A stretch of DNA of 64,000 nt from Mytilus californianus (lineage: Eukaryota), in NCBI RefSeq assembly GCF_021869535.1, contig NW_026262593.1:31496001-31560000 (forward strand), given 5' to 3'. Shown in pieces: positions 4,341 to 27,639 of this stretch. The position numbers and the translations under genes were made by a program. Position 1 is the first letter of the stretch. Each line of letters begins with the position of its first letter. The notes under the pieces were generated by a model. That model was not told the origin of the DNA and made no database searches. It was given only the letters and a program-made list of their open reading frames with translations.

Positions 4341-7300
4341 ATAAATCCTTTTGGCTGTGCAGGATGTATAAATTCGAGGCTTTTCTGTCCCTATCCAACA
4401 TACCTTGATTTCAAGCGGCAGTAATCATTCTTCTTTTTTATCCGGGTCAATCCATTTTAGAACTTACTTCTTTGAATTATTATCTATTTGTTCTCGTCCT
4501 GAATATCCATGAAATATTTGCCACTGAATGCAAACAAACAACAATCAGTCAATAAAAAAACAGGCTTCTTTTTCTCTGCTTCATATTACACGCTTCTGTT
4601 TTGAATCTAGATTTTCCAAAGATTAGTTTGTAAACTTTGTTCTATTGTAAGAAAAATTTGTCCTTCTGCCATCAAGACAATAAGATCATATAATAACTTT
4701 CTGAACTACAGAGTGACTACATACCTAACGTAGTGTTACATTTTAATGTTGTGTTTCTGTTGTGTCGTAGTTCTCCTCTTATATTTGATGTGTTTCCCTC
4801 AGTTTTAGTTTGTAACCCGGATTTGTTTTTTCTCAATCGATTTATGAATTTCGAACAGCGGTATACTACTGTTGCCTTTATTTTCCCAAAAACATACAAA
4901 CTTTCTCAGCTGGTTTTTGAAGAATAAACTCAATTTTACCGATGTTATTTTTCTTTTGGTCATATGCATCTAAATGATAATTATCTTTTTTTTTAACAAA
5001 TTTCTGAATCTGAACAGGCAATTTTTTGAATTTAGAAATGACTAGGAATTTTTAGGTTTTTTATATAATGCCTGTCAAGATAAGGCATTTTATAAATTGC
5101 CGGGAAATTCAGTCATTTTATAAAATGCATGTAAAATATAGACAACTAGAGGTTTCAAGGAGTTCGACAATCGCTCTGCTTGTGGAATAATCTTATGAAG
5201 CTTCTTTTCATAACGTTGTATAAGGTAAATTCTAATATGACGTGCTGTTTTCGCTTTGTAAACAACAGTGTTATAAAATTCTCGATATATCAATGTTTAG
5301 CTCAGACTCACAGACATACATATTTATGGCTGTTACAGTTAAACTCCAATGTAAATTTAAATGTATCGTAACCTATGTGCAGACGCTATCTCGATTTCGC
5401 TGTGTTAAAATTGATATTGAAAAAAAAAAATTACAGAACTGTTATTCATATTTTCTTAATTTAATCGTCTAGCTTTTGCTTCATCATCAGTGCTTTCTCG
5501 TATAATTATGCATGCATTGGTATGCACAGGTATAATATTTTGCAGTTAATTTAAGAACTGTTGTTGAAATGCGAAAGAATATAAATTCTGTATGATCTTT
5601 ACTTTTTAAAAAAAATATATCTATAGAATTGTGTTTGTCATCCATATTTGCTATTTTTGTATGTTATTCATTTCTAATTCAAATTCTATATCAAATAGTA
5701 TTTTTACTTAAAGACGTCAAATAATTTGAAAAAGGTGTAACTTTATAATCACTTAAACTATAAACCTATTGAACATATGAATATAATCTAAAGTATGATC
5801 TACTAAACAACACGCAATCTGTATATGTAATACATGTACATCTGCTTTATAATAGATAATTAGTTGTTCTACCGTTAACTATTGTACAGCTCGTTTCTGT
5901 ACCTAAATCCGATATGGGGCAGGTGTTACATTGTAATACTATTGGTAATCAGATAAACAAAATGGCGAGAAATCGTTTTCTTTAAAACATAATAGCCTCC
6001 GTCAACAGGGTAATACACAAGCGCAAATGTTGTAAAAAAAGAGTAAAAGAGTTTTGATTCACTAGTATATTGATTTTTGAATTGATTTTCCTTTAATTGA
6101 TTTTCCTTATTGTCATTGAAGACTTCTACCTCATTATAAGTTTCCCTCTAGCATTTGGCTGTATATGATAAGAAATGTTTCGTGGGACTATACTTTCCTC
6201 AATTTATTGATTATCGTGTAGATTAGTATATTTAGATTTGTCAGATTTGATGCTTCCGAGCAAAGTATTGATGGAAACTTTAAAATCAGATTTTAAAAAA
6301 TATAATAACCAGATTTACCTACTGTACTTTTTAATTTTACTAAGCAATGATGTGAGTGAACGTCTTGTCTTAAACCTCTATTACATTTTCCTCTTTGAGG
6401 TTGTTAAGCGATACATATGTAATATTTAGCAAGATAAATGTCTATTTTTCAAGACAGAAAAGAAAATTATCGAGTTAGTGTACATTGTAATGTTTCTCAC
6501 ATTGTTTTTTTTATAAATAGATACTCTACCATAATTTCGTCCGCCTTTTAGTATTTTTTATTACAACAAATCAGATCACAATTTGGTCGACATTTGACCA
6601 CGTTACTACAACACTAATGATATCGTTCCATTTTGATATTAAGTTAGACAAAATGAATCATCTCTTTTATCGATTCTTAATCTGTCAGTGTTCCACATTG
6701 ATAATTTAATGAATGGGATTGGTGTTTAAGGTTTTGTCACAATTCTTTTTTGAAAACACGAGTTTTGCAAGAAAGGCCAACACATTAATCGCATTTATGC
6801 ATAGATACATCACTAGTGCCGGGACTCCTTTTTAGTCGATTGAGGTAAACATCATCGTAGAACATGTTGTTTATCAACATAAGAGCAGGCAGAATATGGA
6901 TTGATTTGTGATCACAACTTAACCCGGTAGTTTCCTTTCGCTATGAATAATACGTCATCAATGTCTGTTCTTGATAGAACTGTTAAGACAAAAGTATCAC
7001 AGTTTTCGATGTCTCTGTAACTGTTGTAATAGAAATTCTTCAAATGAATTACTGTGAAAATTTTATATAACACTCGTATCTGTAAGCTTCAATAGATGTA
7101 GCGTTACAGACATCTAGCTAGGAATTTGAATCAAACTCGTGCTGAAGGCTATCTTAAGCATGACGGGAGGACTGTGATCGTTCGTCCCAATTTGATGGCA
7201 TCGTTGTCTGTTTTTGATATAAATGACAATGGCTGTTCTTTGTTTTTGATATGTTAGATTTAGGCATATACAGAATCCAGAGATTAATCGAAGTATGTTG

Positions 7301-16330: not shown

Positions 16331-17482
16331 TATAAAAAAAAGATAAAATTTGTCATTTTAGGAAAATACTTCAAATGAGAAGTTCAAGTAGTCTTGACAG
16401 TTTAGATGTAAACGGACAATTGGTAGATCTCAACATTCTGAACATTTCGAGCCGATTCATATTACCTTAACTCCTTTCCCTTAAATATATAGGTTTAAAC
16501 AAAACAAACAATATATTCATATTGCAAATAACCCAGACAACTAGTAAGGCACCAGATTTTAATAATTATTAAAACAATATTACATTAATACAACTCATAA
16601 GCATAAGCATAAATAAAATCTTAACAATTATAATTGATAAAATGCTTGTATACTGTATTTAAGAGGAGGGAAAATGGCAAAATCCCTTATCATCAACGAT
16701 CCCGCCGGCCAGGAAAAACCAACTAAAACGAGTGAACTCGGTCAAACTACATTACACACTGAATATGTAGTGGAAAAAAGTTGGAAACCTGTGTCCAAAA
16801 CCCAATGCTCGGAATACTTTGGACAGTATTAAAAAAGTCTATAATTATTCAAAACATAATACATATATGAAAAATATAAGTTAAAGCAAAGCAAAAAGAA
16901 TTACATATTTTAAATATGTAAAAAGAAACTTGACACTTCTTGACAGTTGGATAGACAGTGAATTAAGGCTTTAAAATGATTTGGTTTCTCGCTATTCCTT
17001 AAAACAAGGGAAAATTTAATTATAATGCATCATAATACAAAATAACTAAATGACACAATCTGCCTCCGCAATGTATTTATAAATATAAAAGAAATTAATC
17101 TTCTTTCAATCAAAAGGAAGACAAAGATCAGCATAATGGGTAAGGTATCATTAGGAAAATAGATGACAGTTTTGTTAATTCATTCCAATTCTTATTTGCT
17201 GGATACCAGCACACAGTCTGGTTGTTTTTAAAAAACTAGAAAACTAGTGCTTGGCTTGCACATTTCTGTGTGAGGCATATACATAAATATTAATTTTGAT
17301 ACAAAGAAAGCAATACATTTAATAGGGTTTCAAGTTTCATAAATTTTGACACTAAGAAAAAATTTGGGATATGAGCTTAGTAAATACAAAGTTTCATAAC
17401 ATTTTTGACATAGCGAATCGATTTGGAATAGCATCTCATACCTATGTATACATTTTCATAACAATCCTAGCGCAAAAAGACA

Positions 17483-17703
17483 TTTTTGTCAGCTAAATTT
17501 TTCTTCTTGTCTAAATAAAGACATGACAACGGATACCAAGGATGCGAGTTCATTTGCAGAATATCTAACTCAAGATTTGTGAAAAAGGTCATTTATTCAG
17601 AATATCATAAAGCATTATACAACTGACAGTGATGGACAATTATGTCATAAAACAAAACTGAATAAATGACAACAATTGCAAAGGTGGGGAATAAATACCG
17701 CCA
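17483..17703 (-). repeat. Split direct repeat B2 (element 3' end)
   Basis: Matches 18184-18404. Confidence 0.93.
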
Positions 17704-17813
17704 CCCATCAGTAAACAAATTACAAAACATAAACAAACAAATTTATACAATCAACATTTGATATATTAAAATAATAAAAATAAACTTAGTAAAGAGGGTG
17801 TAGGTGGGTGGGA

Positions 17814-18189
17814 AATTGAAAATCTTTACTTTTCTTGCAAAACAAAAATAGCGTCTAGTATCATTCAGTGTAATTGCGAAAATGCGGGCGCAACCAGACG
17901 CTTGTTAAAAGTTAGCATGCACTTTATCCTCATTGGTCAATTAAAATATTTGTGGCCAATGATAATTAGTATTGACCCTGATCATGCCATGACCATGCTG
18001 ACCTTGACTGCCTGTAATCAAAAACTTGCATAATTCCTAGACAAAGACCATGGAAATTTTCGGTTTCTTATTACAACATTGATAACAAATAAACCCTATA
18101 CAAGTTGAAACAGTAGCCTATATAGCTAAAAATTAGTGTATAAAAATTTACTGCCAAAAATGTTTTTATCACCATAAAACTGATTTTTT
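17814..18189 (-). repeat. Split direct repeat A2
   Basis: Matches 23747-24123. Confidence 0.93.
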
Positions 18190-18404
18190 GTCAGCTAAAT
18201 TTTTCTTCTTGTCTAAATAAAGACATGACAATGGATACCAAGGATGCGAGTTCATTTGCAGAATATCTAACTCAAGATTTGTGAAAAAGGTCATTTATTC
18301 AGAATATCATAAAGCATTATACAACTGACAGTGATGGACAATTATGTCATAAAACAAAACTGAATAAATGACAACAATTGCAAAGGTGGGGAATAAATAC
18401 CGCC
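18184..18404 (-). repeat. Split direct repeat B1 (abuts A2)
   Basis: Matches 17483-17703 and shares a T-run with A2. Confidence 0.93.
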
Positions 18405-18695
18405 ATGATCCCCAAGTCCCTGAGTTGGGGAGACCGCCACCCGAGACATCCTTGATGACTATTTTTTTATGACAAAAGGAAAAATTCAGAAAAATAACTT
18501 CATTCAAACACAAAACATTAGTAAAAATAACAAATTAGGCAGAGCAAGCCCTGTTGACCTCTACCTTAACTGTTTGGCAAGTAGACATGCCAACGTAAAG
18601 CAAACCCTTTTGACCTTTACATTCCCATCACACCGTTTGAAGTTTAATCTTTAAACTTGATATTGAGTTCATCCTATTACCAACATTAAAGTAAC

Positions 18696-19577
18696 TTATA
18701 TGTGTAAGGTACACAGAGTGTAACAATATAAATAAAGACAAAATACATATTTATAGATAAAAAATGGGATTAAACCTATGAAAATTAATAGGGACTTTAA
18801 AGAGGAATTAAAGTAAGTGTATGATACTGGTGTACCACAAAGAAATTGAAAAAGGGGACCTGACTTATGTTTTGCCACCTTTAAATAATCCATCATAGTT
18901 TTTACATGGCAAAACATATTACCAAAGTTCCGAGTAATTGAAATAGTCTTGGGACGCAAGTCGCTATGTTTATAGAGTGTTATTGTGACAGTCATATTTG
19001 TTGGGACCTGATTTTTATATCCCATAGTAATGTCTGAAAACTGTAAAACTTTGTAATTTTCATTTTTGTTTTTAACAACAGTTTCTCCTATCCTGAGGAA
19101 ACAATGAAATGCCAAGGACATCATAGCCTTTAATAAGAACTGATTGAACTGATCCTGTATAACATGTGAAACGGCTAACAATAATTTTGATAATATCTCT
19201 TTTGTAATGGGCAATCTATTGTCACAGGAAATCCTCCAATTTTGCGCACCCTTGATAATCTTTTTTATTAAAAAAGAATTTGTAGGATCAGGCAAACATT
19301 TTAACTTGTGAACATAACTTATAGCAGAAACATAAGATGCTATTGTAGACGGTTTATAATTTTGCAAGAACAGAAAACTAATAGAATGAGATACCATCAT
19401 CTGCGTAGATGAATAAGCCTGTGATAAAGGAAAATGTTCCTTACAGAACTGTTCGTATGCTTTTAACATCCTATTATAAGATGCTCTTGTTGCAGATGAT
19501 AGTGAAGCTTGCAACAATTTTCTCGTCATAGATTCAAAAGATGCTGTGGCACTGAAACTGGAGTTGGACTTAACCAA
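18696..19577 (-). pseudogene. DIRS/Ngaro tyrosine recombinase (SAM-like N-domain plus partial catalytic domain)
   Basis: SLSSATRASYNR..YKPSTIASYVSAISYVHK..DPTNSFLIKKIIKG..RLPIT..LAFHCFLRIGE..YKHS; the C-terminal H-x-x-R motif is absent. Confidence 0.9.
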
Positions 19578-21100
19578 GGAGCTATTTGTTGGGCTTTCTG
19601 AAAAGAAAAACGAGGCAACAAGTCGCAGACTACATTTGTTTTACCCGCAATATGCTTTTCTTTAAAATGAATATTAAACTTTAGCGATGCCAAAACTAGT
19701 CTGCGGACCAATTTCATTAATTTTTTATCTCGTGATGAAGTTTTATTGATAATATCAGCAACAGCAAAAACAATACTTTATGATTTGATAATGAAAGCTC
19801 CCATATTTCCACAGAAATAACAATAGGAAACAACTCCTTTATTGTGATGTGTAATTGAAGCATATTGAGAGGCAATTCTCCCGCAAACCAATTACTGCCA
19901 AAAACAGCAGCATATCCCCCATGAACTCCAGCTGCATCTGAATACAAGTTCAATGATTCGGAAGACACCCATTTTTGAAACAAAAAACAAGACTTCCCAT
20001 TGTAATTAGATATAAAATCAAACCATGCCCTCAAATCAGCTCTCGCGTCTGAATTTAGTGTAATTCTATAATGGGGACATGAATAGCCAATCGTCAGATC
20101 AAATAACCTTCTCAGAAATGCTCGTCCTGGAAATACAACACTACAGGCAAAATTCAATAAACCTAAAAGAGACTGCAATTCTCGAAGAATAACTTTCTTT
20201 TTTACCTTAAATATGTTAAGGAGACCCAAATATTTTGCTTTTTTATCCTTTGGTAATCGAGCTACCATAGCCCTAGAATCAATCTCAATGCCATATATTG
20301 TTATGCATGTTGTAGGTAATTGAGTTTTCTCATCTTTTATAGGAACACCCAAAGTTTTTGATAAAGTTAAAAATATGTACAGAACACTTGTTAGTATTTG
20401 CTTCCCCTACAAAAAAGAAATCATCTAGCAAATGTAAAACACCTCTTATTTGAAATTTGCTATTCAAAATCCACTGAAGAGCAGAGGAAAAATTTTCAAA
20501 CAGTTGGCACGAAGAAGAGGCCCCCATGGGGAGGGCTGCATCATGATAAAATTTACCCTCCCATTTAAAGCCTAATAAATGGTATTCTGAAAAATGCACC
20601 GGAATTAAACGGAACGCATCTTCAACATCGGCCTTACTCATTACACAGTTGAAACCATATTCTTGGACAAGTTCTATGACAGTTCAATATTTTGATATGA
20701 AACTGAAGTGTATTCAGGTGGTGTCCAAAAATTGACAGAGTCCCCTTTTGGAAAAGATAGGTCATGAATTAAGCGGAAATACCTACTTTCTTTTTTTAGT
20801 ACCAGACCCAGGGGAAAACAGATAAATTTTTCAAAGGGTGGTTCATTAAAAGGTCCTCTTATTCTGCCTTTCATTATTTCCTTATTTAACTTGAGAGTGA
20901 CCACTTCAGGATTTTCCCTTGCGCTTTTATGGTTGGAAGGAAATTTGTCAACTTTTTTATCAAGCAAAGAATTTATTTTAAAGCCAAATGTAAAACCCTG
21001 AATTAGTTTGAATTTCATTGCTTTGTCATAACATTTGAGGAAAATGTTTAATTTATTTACTTTTATTGGTGCTGGTAGACTTGTGGGTTGTAAGCCACTC
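19526..21100 (-). pseudogene. DIRS/Ngaro RT-RNase H (pol), several frameshifts
   Basis: GFTFGFKI; PLGLVLKKE..FRLIHDLSFPKGDSVN; KADVEDAFRLIP; LPMGASSS; HLLDDFF; LYSDAAG..ITIKELFPIV; MKLVRRLV..HIAGKTNVVCDLLPRF. Confidence 0.92.
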
Positions 21101-22276
21101 TTTACATGAGACTGTGGCATGTTTTGTTTATCACATTGCACACATTGGTGCTTATGTTTGCAGTTTTCGCTGGAGCAGCCACCTGTTCGACAGAAGGTCC
21201 AGCAGTAACCAGGTGGGAATTGACAGCTTTGTTGCTGAACCCGCCGTTGAAAGGGAGGACCTCCATTTTGTTTAACAGATTTATTATTTGATGCATAATT
21301 AGTAGTATTTGCACGATTGAAATGATCATAAAAGGCAGTGCGCCAAAGATCATCATTTACAACTGCCCAATCAAATTTCATCACTCTGCGTACCTTTCTA
21401 AATGTTTCATCGTATGCTTTTGCCATGTTAAACCCAAATTGCTTTGACATTGCTCTAACATTATATGCATATTTGATAAGACTTAAAATATGTTCTGGAT
21501 GTTTAACATAATAAATAGACATATAAATATCAAAGGCTGCAGTCCACTGATGGATTGAAAAGAACTGTTTTGGCTTTGCTTAGGTAGAAATTTTTACTGC
21601 TTTCGATCTAAAAAGTACATCATCATCTTCATCTTTATTAAAATTTGGAGAAAGGGTGACAAAATCCACATAACTCTAAGACATAATGTCTTTTCTGATT
21701 TTTTTCGCTGACATTAAAACCCAAGGGTAAAGTATTTTTCAGTAGGTAACTTGCTGTCTGCCCTATAACAGAATTGTTAATACCTAATGATTGGTCTTCT
21801 TGTGTTGTTGCACTACTGGCTGTGAAGTATCCTGCAACTGATAGGTCTGACGTCACAGGTGGTACCAATGAGCAGTGGACGGTGTTTGAGGATGAAGACG
21901 GCAATGTATGTTGACTCTCTGTTGGGTAATCAGTGCCGGAGACCGCTTCCTGTGTTGCACTAGAGCGTATACCACACACACTTGACAATCTGTCATCTGA
22001 TATTCGGACTCCACTGCTGTCTGTTAAGTGTAAACCAGCTCCCCTCAACTGAGTGATCATTGCTGCAGCTATTTCATCTCTTGTTGGCTGTGCTGTTGTA
22101 CTTGCACTGTTCATCACAGGAGCTGTTGAAGTAGTTGGACCATTGCTTCGGACTCGTTTTCGCCCTCTTGATGGATTAGTAGTTTCGGTCAGTACCACGG
22201 GATCTATGACAAGGTCCTTTTCTGTGAGGTCGGAAGGAGCAGCTCTTCTTTTCGATCTAGCTCTTTGTTTAGGCAT
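21060..22276 (-). pseudogene. DIRS/Ngaro gag-like ORF with C3H and CCHC zinc fingers (frameshifted)
   Basis: MPKQRARSKRR start at 22276; LPLG..V..K; MSIY..KHP..LIKY..AYDETFR..W..LW; CWTFCRTGGCSSENCKHKH. CVQCDKQ(K)HATVSC is restored by adding one A in the A-run near 21125. Confidence 0.82.
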
Positions 22277-22967
22277 CTTTAAAGGAAACAAAAATAATTC
22301 TTGAATACCTGATAATGCGTGTTTACTAACAATATAACATCAAAAATATGCATACATGTATATCACTTATTTAATACTATCCATTGTTTATTGTTCATAC
22401 AACAAGTTCACACAACGAACAATATGGCACACAATAATGCAATATTATATGACAACTACATTGTAACCATACATGATAATAACCATGAAAGTGTATGGTA
22501 CATGTAAAACAGTATGTAAATAAAACAAGTGTAATCTGATACATAAATACAAAAGTGCACTATGAATATCAGAACCATACCCATAATGATGGTTAACCAT
22601 ATGTATATATAGTGATACAAAATATAACCATATAACCAGTGCAAATTGATACCATTTTACAAAATTGCACTGACATATATGATAACCATAGCCATAAAGA
22701 TGGCAATAAAACCATGTGTATAATGATACATTTGTGTGCCACAATAAATTGGGTAAATTAAACAAGAGCAGTGGATTGTCTGCAAAAACTTGTATATACT
22801 AATTAAAGTATTAAATAACTGATGCATCAGTTTTCATGAATAATAAAACAATGAAGTACATGTACAAATAATAGCATACTATAACTAAAGCTTTTTATTT
22901 ATTATAAGCAAACTATGTAAACGTATCGTTAGATATCTCAATTTCATTTTATTAATTTTTAATTATT

Positions 22968-23553
22968 TCACATACGATTTGAACTACCAACAGCTGCACG
23001 AATACTTTTAGCGTAGATGTGCATACCTTCATCATTTAAATGAACTTTATCTGACAACAAAGCTTTCGTGTTTTTTCCACAGGCCCCGGTGTTTCCAAAA
23101 AGTAATATTTGTACGTGATTTCAAAGTTGAAGACAGTACCTGATTCACTTTGTTTACTTTGTTGTTATAATCGGGACCCGACCTTTCGGAATAATTCGGC
23201 AGTAATTGCCCAACGATCACGTGACTAACACCATACGCTGTAATTATGTAATCACAGAATGACGCGATATCTCGAGCCAATTTCTCAGGTTTCCTCTCGC
23301 TTGTCAAGTCATTACCGCCAATTTGAATAAATACAGAATCTGGTTTAAAAGTGTAAAAAACGTGCATAAATTCTGCTTTCTGAATGCTTTTACGACCCGG
23401 ACGCAATGTACTTCCATCGAATCCAGCAAATTCAACCTGAATTTCTGTACCATCGAATCCTAAATTGTATCGCCCTTCTGCACGATTCTCGTACAAAAAT
23501 GATTCTAATCTATGTACAAATGAATGACCAAATATCAAAACTCGATGAACCAT
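22968..23553 (-). CDS. SGNH/GDSL hydrolase (esterase-like), one frameshift in an A-run near 23070
   Basis: Block I IFGHSF, block II G, block III QIGGNDL. Removing one A gives GLWKNTKALLSDKVHLNDEGMHIYAKSIRAAVGSSNRM*, which supplies block V D-x-x-H. Confidence 0.88.
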
Positions 23554-23746
23554 AATTTACAAATTTAAGAATTTACAATATAAATATAATACGAATATTT
23601 TAAATATAAAACGAATATTTTGAATTGAATAATATTTAAGATGGCTTTTACCTTCTGAACAAGTTCTGTGCAATCGTAACTACGTCTTTTCTGAACTAAA
23701 TCGTCAGTTATCTTCTGTCCAAAGCCTCTTTCAGGAACAAACTTGA

Positions 23747-24123
23747 AAATTGAAAATCTTTACTTTTCTTGCAAAACAAAAATAGCGTCTAGTAGCATTC
23801 AGTGTAATTGCGATAATGCGGGCGCAACCAGACGCTTGTTAAAATTTAGCATGCACTTTATCCTCATTGGTCAATTAAAATATTTGTGGCCAATGATAAT
23901 TAGTATTGACCCTGATCATGCCATGACCATGCTGACCTTGACCGCCTGTAATCAAAAACTTGCATAATTCCTAGACAAAGACCATGGAAATTTTCGGTTT
24001 CTTATTACAACATTGATAACAAATAAACCCTATACAAGTTGAAACAGTGGCCTATATAGCTAAAAATAAGTGTATAAAAATTTACTGCCAAAAATGTTTT
24101 TATTACCATAAAACTGATTTTTT
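23747..24123 (-). repeat. Split direct repeat A1 (element 5' end)
   Basis: Matches 17814-18189. Confidence 0.93.
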
Positions 24124-25158
24124 CGAACAAGCACTAAGTTTTTACTTCAAATTTGACACTGGAAATCTATTTGGAATAGCGTATTGTGGCTATATACATG
24201 GATTTTTATTGCAATCTCTGCAAAACAAATGTTAATGTCTCAAGATTTGCGATTTTTTTAAACATGGTTTTATTGTAATGGATTATGCCCCTTTTTTATC
24301 CTTACTTTTAAATTTGGATTTTTCACCTTATCACCATGTATCATAAGCTTTAACAATGACAATATAGGAAATAGGTATAGGTGCCATAAAATTGATTTGT
24401 GTTAAAGAAAAAGGAAAATAGGTATTTTTGTTCACAAATTTTACATCTGGGGGTTCTTTTTATGATGTTGTAATCTGCATACAGGTTAATTTTCAACTAA
24501 ATTCTATGGAAAAGGCAAATATCAATAAGTTTTTTGGACAGATACAGAGCATATGCATCATTGAAACAGATTTGTTCACATTATGTTTGTTATAACAAAT
24601 GAACTGTCAGACTTGAATATTTAGTTATTCGAACCCTAAGCTCTATGTTTCCTTGGCCTAAGTGTGGTTGAAATCTTGAAGATTTGTCAACTTTCACAAA
24701 ACTTTCTATTTTCGACCTAAGTAGGGGGAAACTATCAAAGATTTGTCAGAAAAAAATCGAAAATAATCTCCCCCGCTTCACTTTCCCACACATATAAGCA
24801 TCAACTAGAAACAATTTTAATCTTTAGATAATGGATTAAATATATGGGGCAATGTTTTTTTTCATATTTTCTTTTTTCTAAATTTTCTATTCTGAAGCTT
24901 ACTAGGGAGTAGTTGAGAAAAAAACTCAATTTTGCAATTTATCATAATAAAATCTCAAATTTGGAATGAAATTGAAAACTGTCACAATTCTTTTCTTTTA
25001 TATTTTTAAAAATCCATTTTCAAAGCTTAAGTGGTTTGTCTATAAATTGATTTATAACTTACTCCTGTTTAAATGGAAATGGATACCCTCATTATTATTA
25101 TTTTTTTTATTATTTCATATAAAATATTTTTAGTAAAATCTATTTGGTGCCATATTAA

Positions 25159-26462: not shown

Positions 26463-27639
26463 CTTGTATTTTACATTTAAAGTTACATTATGTGAAATTC
26501 ACAGTAAAATAAATAATCACCATAATTAGCATAAACTAAAATTATTTTTATTTGAATGGGTCTATGAGAGATTCATTTATGATAATTGTAAAGGCCCTTA
26601 TAACAATACTTCAGGGATTGCTGGAGTAATTTAATGAGATTGGCATGTTTCAATTTCTAGGGCACCTTCATCAGGATAAGAACTACAGATGAGTACAAAA
26701 TGGTGAAGTGATCATTTGCACTTCACAATGTCAATCGGGGGAATAATTAAAAATAGAAAATGAAAGCAGGTATAAAAGTAAACTTTAAAAAGAATGTTAA
26801 ATAAGATTTGTTGAATAGTGTTTAATAAAATTTTGCAGAGGAACATGCTTCCAATTGGCTTCCACTCAGAGTTACAGGCTTCTAATTGGCTTCGCTCAGC
26901 CAGAGGTACTGCTTCCAATTGGCTTCAGCAGACAGAAATATATATGTACTGTTCCAATCGGCTTCGCAACGACAGAGGGTACATGCTTCCAATTAGCTTC
27001 ACAAAGAGGTACATGCTTCCAATTGGCTTCGCTTAGACAAGCGTACTTCTCCCACTGTTGAAATGGTACGGAATTGCAAGTCTGTACTACTTCCAGTGTA
27101 GGAAATGGTACATAATTGCAAGTCAAGTGTCGTCCAAATTTGAAAAACATATTTTATTTAACATTCTTGATCCAGTTGACTTTCACATCTACTTTCACTC
27201 CCTATTTATAATTTCTCCTGATGATGACATTGTGAAATGCAAATTATCACTTCAGAATTTTGTACTCTTCTGTAGTTTTAATCCTATGAAGGTGCCACAT
27301 GAACCAAAATATGTCTATCTTATTAAATCACTGCAGCAATCCCTAAAGTCTTGTTGTTATAAAACATTCAATTCTGTGTTTTAACGTAACCCAACCCTGC
27401 ATATATACATGATCGACGCATCACCTTTTGAGATTATATCGTATTTGAGTTTTAGATGGAAGATGAATATGGACAAATAAACAGACATTATCCTTTTTAA
27501 CATATCATTACAAATTAAACAAAGAAAAATCGTATACACTGGAAATCTATTTGGAATAGCAAATTGTGCCTATATATATATGAACTATCATTTCAATCTC
27601 TGCAAAAAAAAATTTCTCAAGATTTGCGATTTTTTAACA

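What the first reader, a model, noticed from the sequence alone, without database searches (positions are those of the whole stretch)
17483..24123. Complete-architecture Ngaro-type YR retrotransposon carrying an SGNH hydrolase 5' of gag
Seen: A1 (24123-23747), SGNH ORF, gag, RT/RH, YR, B1, A2, a 110-bp spacer and B2. The repeats differ by only about 1-2%, so the insertion is young. The hydrolase keeps Ser (GHS), Asn (GGND) and D-x-x-H once one homopolymer base is corrected. Established: Ngaro/PAT elements have split direct repeats, and SGNH esterases occur in some CR1/L2 ORF1 proteins. As I recall they also occur in some Ngaro elements downstream of YR. Inference: a hydrolase as the first ORF may mark a distinct lophotrochozoan lineage in which a lipid-binding or esterase cargo assists particle assembly or membrane association.
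Basis: partly seen in the sequence, partly recalled or inferred. Interest (0 to 1): 0.72.

Follow-up and report, generated by a model that had tools for sequence, protein, structure and literature searches.

The report
Mussel Ngaro retrotransposon with leading esterase
This is a dead copy of a mussel jumping gene of the Ngaro (tyrosine-recombinase) type whose whole lineage carries a working-looking lipase-like esterase gene in front of its usual genes, not behind them as described in fish and frogs; this is a modest but real new variant that could help explain why retroelements keep such esterases.

Summary
On the minus strand, 24123-17483 reads A1, SGNH ORF, gag-RT/RNase H, YR, B1, A2, 109-nt spacer, B2. 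A1/A2 are 98.1% identical and B1/B2 99.5%. The copy itself is dead. It has one extra A in the esterase, four more private frame-breaking indels in gag-pol, and a ~416-bp deletion that removes the catalytic end of the recombinase.

The esterase is not a private insertion. All 16 other family copies that span that region carry it at the same place. Substitutions shared between copies are enriched for synonymous changes, as in RT and YR. Between families 70% alike its dN/dS is 0.10-0.12 (RT 0.09). Genome-wide coordinates show at least 21 SGNH-RT pairs on one strand, many followed by YR, in lineages down to 42-44% RT identity. Four loci of a sister family have all three frames open. A public contig shows the same order.

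The papers I could search place the Ngaro hydrolase after YR, in amphibians. I call this a new variant of a known kind. The lineage is shown only within Mytilus, and the esterase's function is inferred.

Conserved splice-like signals flank the esterase ORF. RNA data were too thin to test them.

This scan had already flagged the same layout elsewhere in this genome (s1-288004).

The parts
23747..24123 (-). A1, the 5' split direct repeat (377 nt). It holds a CCAAT box and a GCCATTTT motif that are conserved in sister families.
   Evidence: 98.1% identical to A2. Element starts at the same base in other copies with unrelated flanks. Motifs seen in the three-family alignment.
23638..23654 (-). Conserved AAG|GTA(A/T)(A/T)AG(G)CCATCT motif, 98 nt upstream of the SGNH ATG. 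It could be a 5' splice donor (G of GT at 23651) or a YY1-like box.
   Evidence: Conserved in four families, including public contig L044, although the flanks are otherwise poorly alignable. The function is inferred.
22968..23553 (-). SGNH/GDSL esterase gene. It is open from 23553 to 23047. Its true C-terminus (block V, D-x-x-H) continues in the +1 frame from 23066 to the TGA at 22970-22968.
   Evidence: Pfam match above cut-off. Alignment of 20 copies. +1-frame translation. Catalytic blocks conserved in 22 homologues.
23071..23076 (-). A-run with one extra A, private to this copy. It shifts the esterase frame.
   Evidence: All 19 other copies have one A fewer.
22279..22967 (-). AT-rich non-coding spacer between the SGNH and gag genes.
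   Evidence: No coding signature in the shared-versus-singleton test. Not alignable between families. Folds better than shuffles (z -3.5). No repeat or hairpin array.
22277..22298 (-). Pyrimidine tract followed by AG, immediately before the gag ATG (22276-22274). It looks like a 3' splice site.
   Evidence: The same Y-tract, (A/T)AG and ATGCC arrangement occurs in four families whose spacers are otherwise unalignable. The function is inferred.
19526..22276 (-). gag-pol region: a disordered gag N-terminus, a Cys/His zinc-knuckle-like motif (about 21210-21130), RT (LLDDF motif around 20430), thumb and RNase H. It is one ORF in less damaged copies. Here it is split by private indels at about 21126 (+1), 20685 (-1), 20379 (-8) and 19766 (-13).
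   Evidence: ORFs. RVT_1, RVT_thumb and RNase H hits. gag and RT are one 506-aa frame in L005. Private indels are echoed by contigs of other copies (table 4).
18766..19577 (-). Tyrosine recombinase gene, covering only the N-terminal SAM-like and core part. It overlaps the end of the RNase H ORF by 52 nt, which leaves no room for a methyltransferase domain.
   Evidence: Phage_int_SAM hits. The full catalytic domain (PF00589, 28.2 bits against a cut-off of 27.1) is present in copy L002.
18764..18766 (-). Breakpoint of a private deletion of about 416 bp. It removes the last ~70 YR codons (HxxR and the catalytic Tyr) and about 200 bp of 3' UTR.
   Evidence: Every other copy has 350-420 extra bases at element position 5359. 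Contigs in public runs run on into unlike sequence at 18765 (table 7).
18406..18763 (-). Remaining 3' untranslated region.
   Evidence: No ORF with a family match.
18185..18405 (-). B1, internal copy of the 3' repeat. The B1/A2 junction shares an A-run.
   Evidence: 99.5% identical to B2. Junction sequence.
17813..18189 (-). A2, internal copy of the 5' repeat.
17704..17812 (-). 109-nt unique spacer between A2 and B2.
   Evidence: The same layout occurs in copies L032, L033 and L035.
17483..17703 (-). B2, the terminal 3' repeat. The element ends ...GCTGACAAAAA.
   Evidence: Same end in other copies with unrelated flanks and no target-site duplication.

Best explanation
The stretch is a decayed copy of a Ngaro-like tyrosine-recombinase retrotransposon from a Mytilus mussel genome. 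By structure it has split direct repeats (A1 ... B1A2 ... B2), a gag-RT/RNase H ORF, a YR gene, no methyltransferase and no target-site duplication. It belongs to a broad clade of such elements that carry a stand-alone cytosolic SGNH esterase gene of about 196 aa as the first ORF, between A1 and gag.

Shown: the esterase is an integral part of the element. It lies inside the repeats, is present in every copy, has diverged in step with RT (equal dN), and has been under purifying selection as strong as that on RT and YR. Its Ser-Gly-Asn-His/Asp catalytic set is conserved and it has the fold of PAF-acetylhydrolase-type enzymes. This copy probably entered intact about 1-1.6% divergence ago and has since collected its private lesions.

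Inferred, function: the esterase is an accessory enzyme made by the element that acts on an acetyl or lipid ester at membranes to help the RNP or particle reach the germ-line nucleus. This is an analogy to the L2 ORF1p esterase, and I put it at about 50%.

Inferred, expression: the full-length RNA serves as genome and as esterase mRNA, while gag-pol is translated from an RNA in which the esterase ORF is spliced out, using the conserved GT (23651) and AG (22277) signals. I put this at about 40%. An internal promoter or reinitiation is about as likely.

The confidence value given refers to the identity and integral-esterase part of this statement, not to the two inferred parts.
For: Architecture and boundaries.

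Domains.

The esterase in every copy: all 16 other family copies that span the region, plus 3 partial ones, have it at the same position.

Selection within the family: shared versus singleton substitutions give N/S 23/21 versus 125/32 for SGNH (p=8e-4). Both shifted control frames are not significant. RT gives p=6e-5, YR 1.5e-3 and gag 5e-3, and the spacer shows no signal.

Selection between families (~70% nucleotide identity): SGNH dN/dS is 0.10-0.12 and RT 0.09, with dN 0.18 for both.

Genome-wide coordinates: at least 21 same-strand SGNH-to-RT pairs at 2.45-3.4 kb spacing, many with YR just downstream. They reach down to 31-34% SGNH, 42-44% RT and 39-41% YR identity. Four loci of a sister family have open frames of 209, 621 and 334 aa; one of the four has a TAA within its RT match.

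Independent public contig JYMV01045989.1: SGNH, then gag, then RT on one strand.

Protein: catalytic blocks conserved in 22 homologues. AF2 model pLDDT 84.8. Best solved match is PAF-AH Ib, Z 17.5, rmsd 2.9 A over 173 residues. More than 25 clusters of full-length homologues, named ones from three Mytilus species.

Splice-like signals conserved in four families.

RNA: low-level sense-strand reads from family members.

Literature: the Ngaro hydrolase lies after YR in amphibians (PMC9210276). The L2 esterase is active and binds acidic phospholipids (PMC3905857).
Against: No RT or YR phylogeny with Ngaro, PAT and DIRS reference sequences was possible, so the Ngaro label rests on structure only. 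None of about 20 sequenced copies of this particular family has all ORFs intact, so this family may be extinct. Esterase activity, substrate and role are untested. No read spanning the proposed splice was seen; depth there was 0-1, so this is not evidence against splicing. The GCCATCT motif beside the proposed donor could equally be a YY1-type promoter element. Repbase and Dfam were not available, so the layout may already be on record there. Gene context outside Mytilus is unknown.
Confidence: 0.85

Rival explanations
1. The SGNH ORF is not part of the element. It would be a private capture or a nested or adjacent fragment of another element (for example a LINE esterase) or of a host gene that happens to lie next to this copy.
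For: Stand-alone SGNH ORFs also occur at the head of CR1-type LINEs in this genome according to earlier scan notes. The ORF is separated from gag by about 690 nt of non-coding DNA.
Against: The ORF lies between A1 and gag, inside the repeats. It is present at the same position in all other copies despite different flanks. It has diverged in step with RT. The same order and spacing recur in at least 21 loci of many lineages.
Confidence: 0.02
2. The esterase is a neutral passenger or pseudogene that hitch-hikes with the element and has no role in its life cycle.
For: In this family every sampled copy has a damaged esterase ORF. ZfL2-1 ORF1p is dispensable in a HeLa assay (PMC3905857).
Against: All ORFs of these old copies are damaged equally. 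The substitutions that arose while the family was active are biased towards synonymous changes. dN/dS between families is 0.10-0.12, the same as RT. The catalytic residues are near-invariant across 22 homologues. A sister family keeps open 209-aa frames.
Confidence: 0.03
3. The element is a YR retrotransposon but not a Ngaro in the phylogenetic sense. It could be a PAT-like lineage that lost its methyltransferase, or a separate YR group that evolved split direct repeats independently.
For: Split direct repeats and methyltransferase loss are homoplastic among YR elements (PMC4157794). gag here has a Cys/His zinc-knuckle-like motif, a feature used for some PAT elements. No RT tree was made.
Against: [quoted passage not shown] Ngaro elements are reported as common in a mollusc (53 in Lottia, PMC4157794). 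A hydrolase is known only from Ngaro among these groups (PMC9210276).
Confidence: 0.1
4. On the origin of the layout: the mussel esterase was captured independently, for example from a mussel LINE with a leading esterase ORF. It would then not be inherited from a hydrolase-bearing Ngaro ancestor and moved.
For: Earlier scan notes report stand-alone esterase ORFs at the head of CR1-type LINEs in the same genome. Own-genome SGNH matches at 27-35% identity without a nearby RT or YR match could be such LINE genes. Esterases are scattered over CR1, RTEX and Penelope elements (PMC3905857).
Against: Nothing direct. In a circular intermediate both layouts read YR, SGNH, gag, so a shift of the repeat block would be enough. 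The profile of the mussel esterase does not reach the L2 esterase in the PDB.
Confidence: 0.4

Closest known systems
Vertebrate Ngaro elements with a hydrolase ORF (fish and amphibian Ngaro; Repbase DIRS-53_XT and DIRS-54_XT of Xenopus)
   Same: Split direct repeats A1 ... B1A2 ... B2; gag-like, RT/RH and YR ORFs; no methyltransferase; an extra ORF with an SGNH hydrolase domain of unproven function (PMC9210276).
   Different: There the hydrolase ORF follows YR as a fourth ORF. Here it precedes gag as the first ORF, and YR is followed only by about 570 nt of UTR. Whether the two hydrolases are orthologous was not tested.
Esterase domain of CR1/L2-type LINE ORF1 proteins (ZfL2-1 ORF1p; Kapitonov and Jurka 2003; Schneider et al. 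2013)
   Same: An SGNH esterase with a conserved catalytic set, encoded at the 5' end of a retroelement. The L2 enzyme resembles PAF-AH and TAP structurally, as this one does.
   Different: In L2 it is a domain fused behind a coiled coil inside ORF1p of an endonuclease/RT element. Here it is a free-standing protein of about 196 aa in a gag-bearing YR element. A sequence profile does not reach the L2 structure. The positions of the 'transposon-specific' His/Ser pair appear to hold invariant Gln and His here. That is my own reading and was not tested structurally.
PAF-acetylhydrolase Ib catalytic subunits (bovine alpha1/alpha2, PDB 1wab, 1fxw)
   Same: Best solved structural match: Z 17.5, rmsd 2.9 A over 173 of 194 residues. 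It is also the second sequence-profile hit (E 0.018). Both are cytosolic and lack a signal peptide.
   Different: It is a cellular enzyme with only 17-18% identity, and is not encoded by a mobile element.
Three-ORF CR1-type LINEs of Mytilus with a stand-alone leading esterase ORF
   Same: Same genome; a free-standing SGNH ORF as the first cistron of a retroelement.
   Different: A LINE backbone (PHD-ORF1, EN-RT) rather than gag-RT/RH-YR with split repeats. I did not check those notes or compare the proteins.
PAT-like YR retrotransposons
   Same: Split direct repeats, gag (often with a zinc finger), RT/RH and YR.
   Different: PAT-like elements carry a methyltransferase domain after RNase H. 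Here the RNase H and YR ORFs overlap, so there is no room for one.

Membership tests
Ngaro-like YR retrotransposons (order DIRS) | Split direct repeats A1 ... B1-A2 ... B2, with the internal repeats downstream of YR | tested here: met
   A1/A2 377 nt at 98.1%; B1/B2 221 nt at 99.5%; B1 abuts A2. The same layout occurs in copies L032, L033 and L035.
Ngaro-like YR retrotransposons (order DIRS) | Reverse transcriptase and RNase H of the LTR-retroelement type | tested here: met
   RVT_1 at 38.5 bits (cut-off 29.6), plus RVT_thumb and RNase H-like hits, on the intact 446-aa ORF of sister family L043. The window's own pieces give weaker hits.
Ngaro-like YR retrotransposons (order DIRS) | Tyrosine recombinase in place of a DDE integrase | tested here: met
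   PF00589 at 28.2 bits (cut-off 27.1) on family copy L002, which has HxxR and the C-terminal Tyr region. The window copy keeps only the SAM-like and core part because of the ~416-bp deletion.
Ngaro-like YR retrotransposons (order DIRS) | No methyltransferase domain (separates Ngaro from DIRS-like and PAT-like) | tested here: met
   The RNase H ORF end and the YR ORF start overlap by about 50 nt in the window and in L002. There are no methyltransferase Pfam hits.
Ngaro-like YR retrotransposons (order DIRS) | Integration without target-site duplication | tested here: met
   Flanks of the window copy and of other copies show no duplication. The ends are an A-run shared with the B1/A2 junction.
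Ngaro-like YR retrotransposons (order DIRS) | RT/RH (and YR) cluster with Ngaro reference elements in a phylogeny | not tested
Hydrolase-bearing Ngaro as described in vertebrates | SGNH hydrolase ORF located after YR | tested here: not met
   Here the SGNH ORF lies between A1 and gag. Nothing SGNH-like follows YR. No own-genome SGNH match lies downstream of a YR match.
SGNH/GDSL hydrolase superfamily | Sequence-family match above the curated threshold | tested here: met
   PF13472 at 35.6 bits (cut-off 32.9) and PF00657 at 27.6 bits (cut-off 23.6) on the window ORF.
SGNH/GDSL hydrolase superfamily | Four conserved blocks: Ser (I), Gly (II), Asn (III), Asp-x-x-His (V) | tested here: met
   G-H-S, G-G-G-T, G-G-N-D and D-K-V-H are invariant or at least 90% conserved in 22 homologues. 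In the window copy, block V is out of frame after the extra A.
SGNH/GDSL hydrolase superfamily | Flavodoxin-like alpha/beta/alpha fold | tested here: met
   AF2 model of the natural homologue P0002 has pLDDT 84.8. Foldseek gives 183 PDB hits at E<=1e-3, and all the listed top ones are SGNH-type or GDSL-type enzymes or scaffolds. VIA Z reaches 17.6.
SGNH/GDSL hydrolase superfamily | Esterase activity | not testable with these tools
   Needs a protein assay.
CR1/L2-type ORF1p esterase | Esterase fused to a coiled coil within ORF1p of an EN/RT non-LTR element | tested here: not met
   It is a stand-alone protein of about 196 aa that begins at strand beta-1 with Ser at residue 11. It is followed by gag-RT/RH-YR, not by EN-RT.
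CR1/L2-type ORF1p esterase | Transposon-specific buried His/Ser pair (H191/S228 of ZfL2-1) | tested here: inconclusive
   By counting from block III, the equivalent positions seem to hold invariant Gln77 and His111 (PMC3905857). No residue-level structural alignment was available.

The most novel reading that the evidence does not exclude
Two linked readings go beyond the secure result. (1) These mussel Ngaro elements may use retrovirus-like alternative splicing. The esterase ORF would sit inside an intron bounded by a conserved AAG|GTA donor about 80-100 nt upstream of its ATG and a conserved pyrimidine-tract/AG acceptor that abuts the gag ATG. Unspliced RNA would then be the genome and the esterase mRNA, and spliced RNA the gag-pol mRNA. 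(2) The 5' position may be a circular permutation of the vertebrate layout. In the circular replication intermediate both read YR, SGNH, gag, and only the repeat block (the circle junction) has moved to the other side of the esterase. That would make gene order in YR retroelements a read-out of where the circle is opened.
Probability: 0.3. Interest if true: 0.7.

Novelty: new variant of a known kind. Interest (0 to 1): 0.5.

Why it matters
SGNH esterases turn up repeatedly in unrelated retroelements: CR1/L2, RTEX, Penelope-like and vertebrate Ngaro. Twenty years after their discovery nobody knows what they do. This report describes a large, old and partly still open-framed clade of mussel YR retrotransposons. 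In it the esterase is a separate, strongly constrained first gene, not a domain of ORF1p and not a trailing ORF.

That has three uses. It shows that the enzyme is useful to a gag-bearing, recombinase-integrating element, and so is not tied to LINE-type RNPs. It offers a small free-standing natural protein that can be assayed on its own. And it raises a concrete question that RNA data can answer: how does a three-gene YR element express a downstream gag-pol?

It also shows that 'hydrolase after YR' is not a general rule for Ngaro annotation in invertebrate genomes.

Tried and rejected
The gene context of the Mytilus, Pecten and metagenome homologues could not be read.
The sister-family loci were therefore studied from coordinate tables only, and I did not try another tool to fetch them.

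Searches that gave little:
- The metagenome scan gave a single locus, L044.
- A PDB sequence profile did not reach the L2 ORF1p esterase.
- Rfam gave no family in 17000-24600.
- Literature searches for a 5' hydrolase in Ngaro or DIRS elements found none. Goodwin and Poulter 2004 is not held.

Ideas checked and dropped:
The spacer does fold better than shuffles.
- The 45-nt repeat that flanks the element (D4) is not significant. The two flanks share no similarity, so it is neither a target-site duplication nor an insertion into a tandem repeat.
- An SGNH-gag fusion by splicing from the GTATGT that overlaps the esterase stop codon to the acceptor before the gag ATG: the joined frame would hit a stop after three codons (read).

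RNA: only 64 raw reads from a 2026 stranded RNA run were laid. Nearly all were in the sense direction and most came from other copies, with none across the esterase ORF. They give no verdict on transcript structure.

Not attempted:
- The big representative-protein search, because no claim here rests on absence of relatives.
- A consensus or a repaired frame. Broken ORFs were compared codon by codon on natural sequences only.

Full report
**Observation**

- The repeat finder and pairwise alignments give A1 23747-24123 and A2 17813-18189 (377 nt, 98.1% identical).
- B1 is 18185-18405 and B2 is 17483-17703 (221 nt, 99.5% identical). A 109-nt spacer separates A2 from B2.
- On the minus strand the ORFs between A1 and B1 run SGNH, gag, RT/RNase H pieces, YR.
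- Pfam places the first ORF in Lipase_GDSL_2 and Lipase_GDSL above their curated cut-offs. The later pieces hit RVT_1, RVT_thumb and the SAM-like N-terminal domain of phage integrases.
- The esterase frame holds G-H-S and G-G-N-D. After an A-run at 23076-23071 the +1 frame reads on through D-K-V-H to a TGA at 22970-22968.
- An alignment of 20 copies shows that the window copy has one A more in that run than all the others.

**State of this copy**

Only the layout is complete. Compared with ten near-full-length copies, the window copy has these private frame-breaking indels:
- about 23076 (+1, esterase)
- about 21126 (+1), 20685 (-1), 20379 (-8) and 19766 (-13), all in gag-pol
- two more in non-coding parts

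It also lacks about 416 bp that every other copy has at element position 5359, which is window ~18765. In copy L002 that segment encodes the end of the recombinase with HxxR and the tyrosine region. The L002 ORF is the one that reaches the Pfam Phage_integrase cut-off.

The repeats differ at 8 of 598 sites and the copy's private substitution load is 1.58%. Seven small indels and one deletion are about what that much neutral decay would give. The copy may therefore have been intact when it integrated; this is an inference.

**Family, ends and derivatives**

A DNA search of the window's own assembly (1.65 Gb, 175 contigs) returned 85 matching pieces from about 25-30 loci at 84-97% identity.
- All copies begin AAAA(A)TCAGTTTTATGG and end GCTGACAAAAA. 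Their flanks are unrelated and there is no target-site duplication.
- The B1/A2 junction shares the same A-run, as expected if the internal B1-A2 junction mirrors the circle junction used for integration.
- Some copies end after a single B (L002, L003, L007). Isolated A-spacer-B units also exist. These look like products of recombination between the repeats.
- Every sampled copy of this family has several broken ORFs. In less damaged copies gag and RT form one frame, for example 506 aa in L005.

**The esterase belongs to the element and was selected**

All 16 other copies that span the region, and three partial ones, carry the ORF at the same place.

I split substitutions into two classes. Those shared by two or more copies arose while the lineage was still propagating. 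Singletons are mostly decay after insertion.
- For the esterase, shared changes give N/S 23/21 and singletons 125/32 (Fisher p=8e-4). Neither shifted control frame shows a difference.
- RT (p=6e-5), YR (p=1.5e-3) and gag (p=5e-3) behave the same way. The SGNH-gag spacer does not.

Two diverged families in the same genome (L042, L043; about 70% nucleotide identity) also have the esterase upstream of gag/RT on the same strand. Against them the esterase has dN/dS 0.10-0.12 and RT 0.09, with the same dN of about 0.18. Shifted frames give values above 1.

**Genome-wide and independent support**

Loci could no longer be fetched, so I compared the coordinate tables of three own-genome protein searches: SGNH, RT/RH and YR.
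- At least 21 SGNH matches lie 2.45-3.4 kb upstream of an RT match on the same strand. The window family's spacing is 2.72 kb. Many are followed within about 300 bp by a YR match.
- Four loci of a sister family show open frames of 209 aa (SGNH), 621 aa (RT/RH) and 334 aa (YR); the C143:50.35 Mb locus has one TAA within its RT match. They lie at C143:46.98 Mb, C13:59.08 Mb, C143:50.35 Mb and C121:4.98 Mb.
- The same order holds in lineages whose proteins are only 31-34% (SGNH), 42-44% (RT) and 39-41% (YR) identical to the references. Examples are C121:28.745 Mb and C89:6.09 Mb.
- A group of RT+YR loci at about 39% RT identity has no SGNH match nearby. It may be a hydrolase-less Ngaro lineage, but only the best 150 candidates are scored, so absence is not proven.
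- No SGNH match lies downstream of a YR match.
- A public contig from another assembly (JYMV01045989.1, L044) shows SGNH (187-aa ORF), then about 0.9 kb, then gag, then RT on one strand.

**The protein**

The word-index search found 24, and with a profile 72, relatives. More than 25 are full-length clusters of 182-208 aa. The named ones come from Mytilus galloprovincialis, M. coruscus and M. edulis, and at 36-37% identity from Pecten maximus.
- Block I Ser, block II Gly, block III Gly-Asn and block V Asp are invariant or at least 90% conserved.
- There is no signal peptide. The chain starts at strand beta-1 with Ser at residue 11.
- An AF2 model of the natural intact homologue P0002 (pLDDT 84.8) matches SGNH enzymes throughout. 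The best matches are the PAF-acetylhydrolase Ib catalytic subunits (Z 17.5, rmsd 2.9 A, 173 residues). This family is also the second profile hit in the PDB.
- The Atlas lists look-alike clusters of about 200 aa from molluscs, cnidarians and annelids. Their gene context is unknown.

**Expression**

The esterase ATG has A at -3 and G at +4. gag starts about 690 nt after the esterase stop, so a scanning ribosome would not reach it.

Two short features are conserved in all four families that I could read, although the surrounding sequence is barely or not alignable:
- AAG|GTA(A/T)(A/T)AG(G)CCATCT, 76-98 nt upstream of the esterase ATG
- a pyrimidine tract plus (A/T)AG directly abutting ATGCC of gag

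Together they look like the donor and acceptor of an intron that would remove the esterase ORF. The first motif also fits a YY1-type GCCATnTT box.

The one raw-read RNA run gave 64 reads at 90% likeness or better. Nearly all were in the orientation expected for sense transcripts. They were concentrated on A and B, with none over the esterase ORF and no junction read. Family members are therefore transcribed at a low level, but the splicing idea remains untested.

**Comparison with what is known**

[quoted passage not shown] An RT phylogeny could not be made.

Hydrolase ORFs are known in Ngaro elements, but they are described as lying after YR in amphibians, for example DIRS-53_XT with four ORFs (PMC9210276). 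[quoted passage not shown]

The other known retroelement esterase is a domain of CR1/L2-type ORF1p. It is active, has low turnover, and binds acidic phospholipids and liposomes (PMC3905857).

The mussel protein differs from both. It is free-standing and it comes first. In a circular intermediate, both Ngaro layouts read YR, SGNH, gag and differ only in the side on which the repeat block lies. That is my inference.

**Limits**
Gene context outside this genome therefore rests on one contig.
- Repbase and Dfam were not available.
- All comparisons used natural sequences, and codons with gaps or stops were skipped.
- The genome is a Mytilus according to earlier scan notes and my protein hits. Its size and contig count fit what I recall of the M. 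californianus reference assembly, but no tool named it.

**Verdict**

This is a dead member of a large mussel clade of Ngaro-like elements with a conserved, selected, leading esterase gene: a new variant of a known kind, of moderate interest. A first-stage note (s1-288004) had already flagged the same gene order elsewhere in this genome.

Noticed in passing
G000 C143:46981729-46986649(+), C13:59081485-59086414(-), C143:50353620-50358549(+), C121:4984314-4989208(-): Four loci of a sister family (SGNH 60%, RT 72%, YR 56% identity to the references) have near-identical scores and open frames of 209, 621 and 334 aa in the order SGNH, RT/RH, YR (the C143:50.35 Mb locus has one TAA within its RT match). 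This is a much younger burst than the window's family. I saw them only as coordinates and did not fetch them.
   Followed up: partly
L002, L003, L007; G000 C88:45350102-45350805, C88:84988834-84989539, C154:19314609-19315340: Two kinds of recombination derivative of the family exist. Some copies end after a single B, as if B1 and B2 had recombined. There are also isolated A-spacer-B units, as if A1 and A2 had recombined, analogous to solo LTRs.
   Followed up: partly
window 23747/18405 (table 5): A contig from a public run joins the end of A directly to the start of B. Neither the internal region nor the 109-nt spacer is present. This suggests a short A-B variant or non-autonomous derivative.
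   Followed up: no
window about 23870-23780 (element about 255-345): A CCAAT box (TGACCAAT) and a CGCCATTTTG motif inside repeat A are conserved across three families about 70% alike. They are possible promoter elements.
   Followed up: no
G000 C121:52399318-52403651 and C121:52502635-52505138: Two element copies about 103 kb apart are broken into the same fragments. This points to a segmental duplication that contains a dead copy.
   Followed up: no
G000 C1:58770579-58772824(-), C1:65896200-65898445(-), C99:42045815-42048060(-), C24:10946895-10949101(-): RT (about 39% identity, open frames of 438-554 aa) and YR (335-aa open frame) pairs with no SGNH match nearby. This may be a hydrolase-less Ngaro lineage living alongside the esterase-bearing clade. 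Absence is not proven.
   Followed up: no
G000 C46:42112308-42112763, 42192653-42193108, 42321642-42322097: Three SGNH-like open frames (33% identity, 212-222 aa), 80-130 kb apart on one strand, with no RT or YR match nearby. They may be a host gene cluster or LINE-borne esterases.
   Followed up: no
window 24156-24258 and 27536-27635: A repeat of about 100 bp (83% identity) lies just upstream of the element and again 3.4 kb away. It is unrelated to the element.
   Followed up: no
window 22300-22970 (-): The AT-rich SGNH-gag spacer is rich in ATGGTTA-like words. Its predicted RNA fold is more stable than shuffles (z -3.5). It is not conserved between families.
   Followed up: partly
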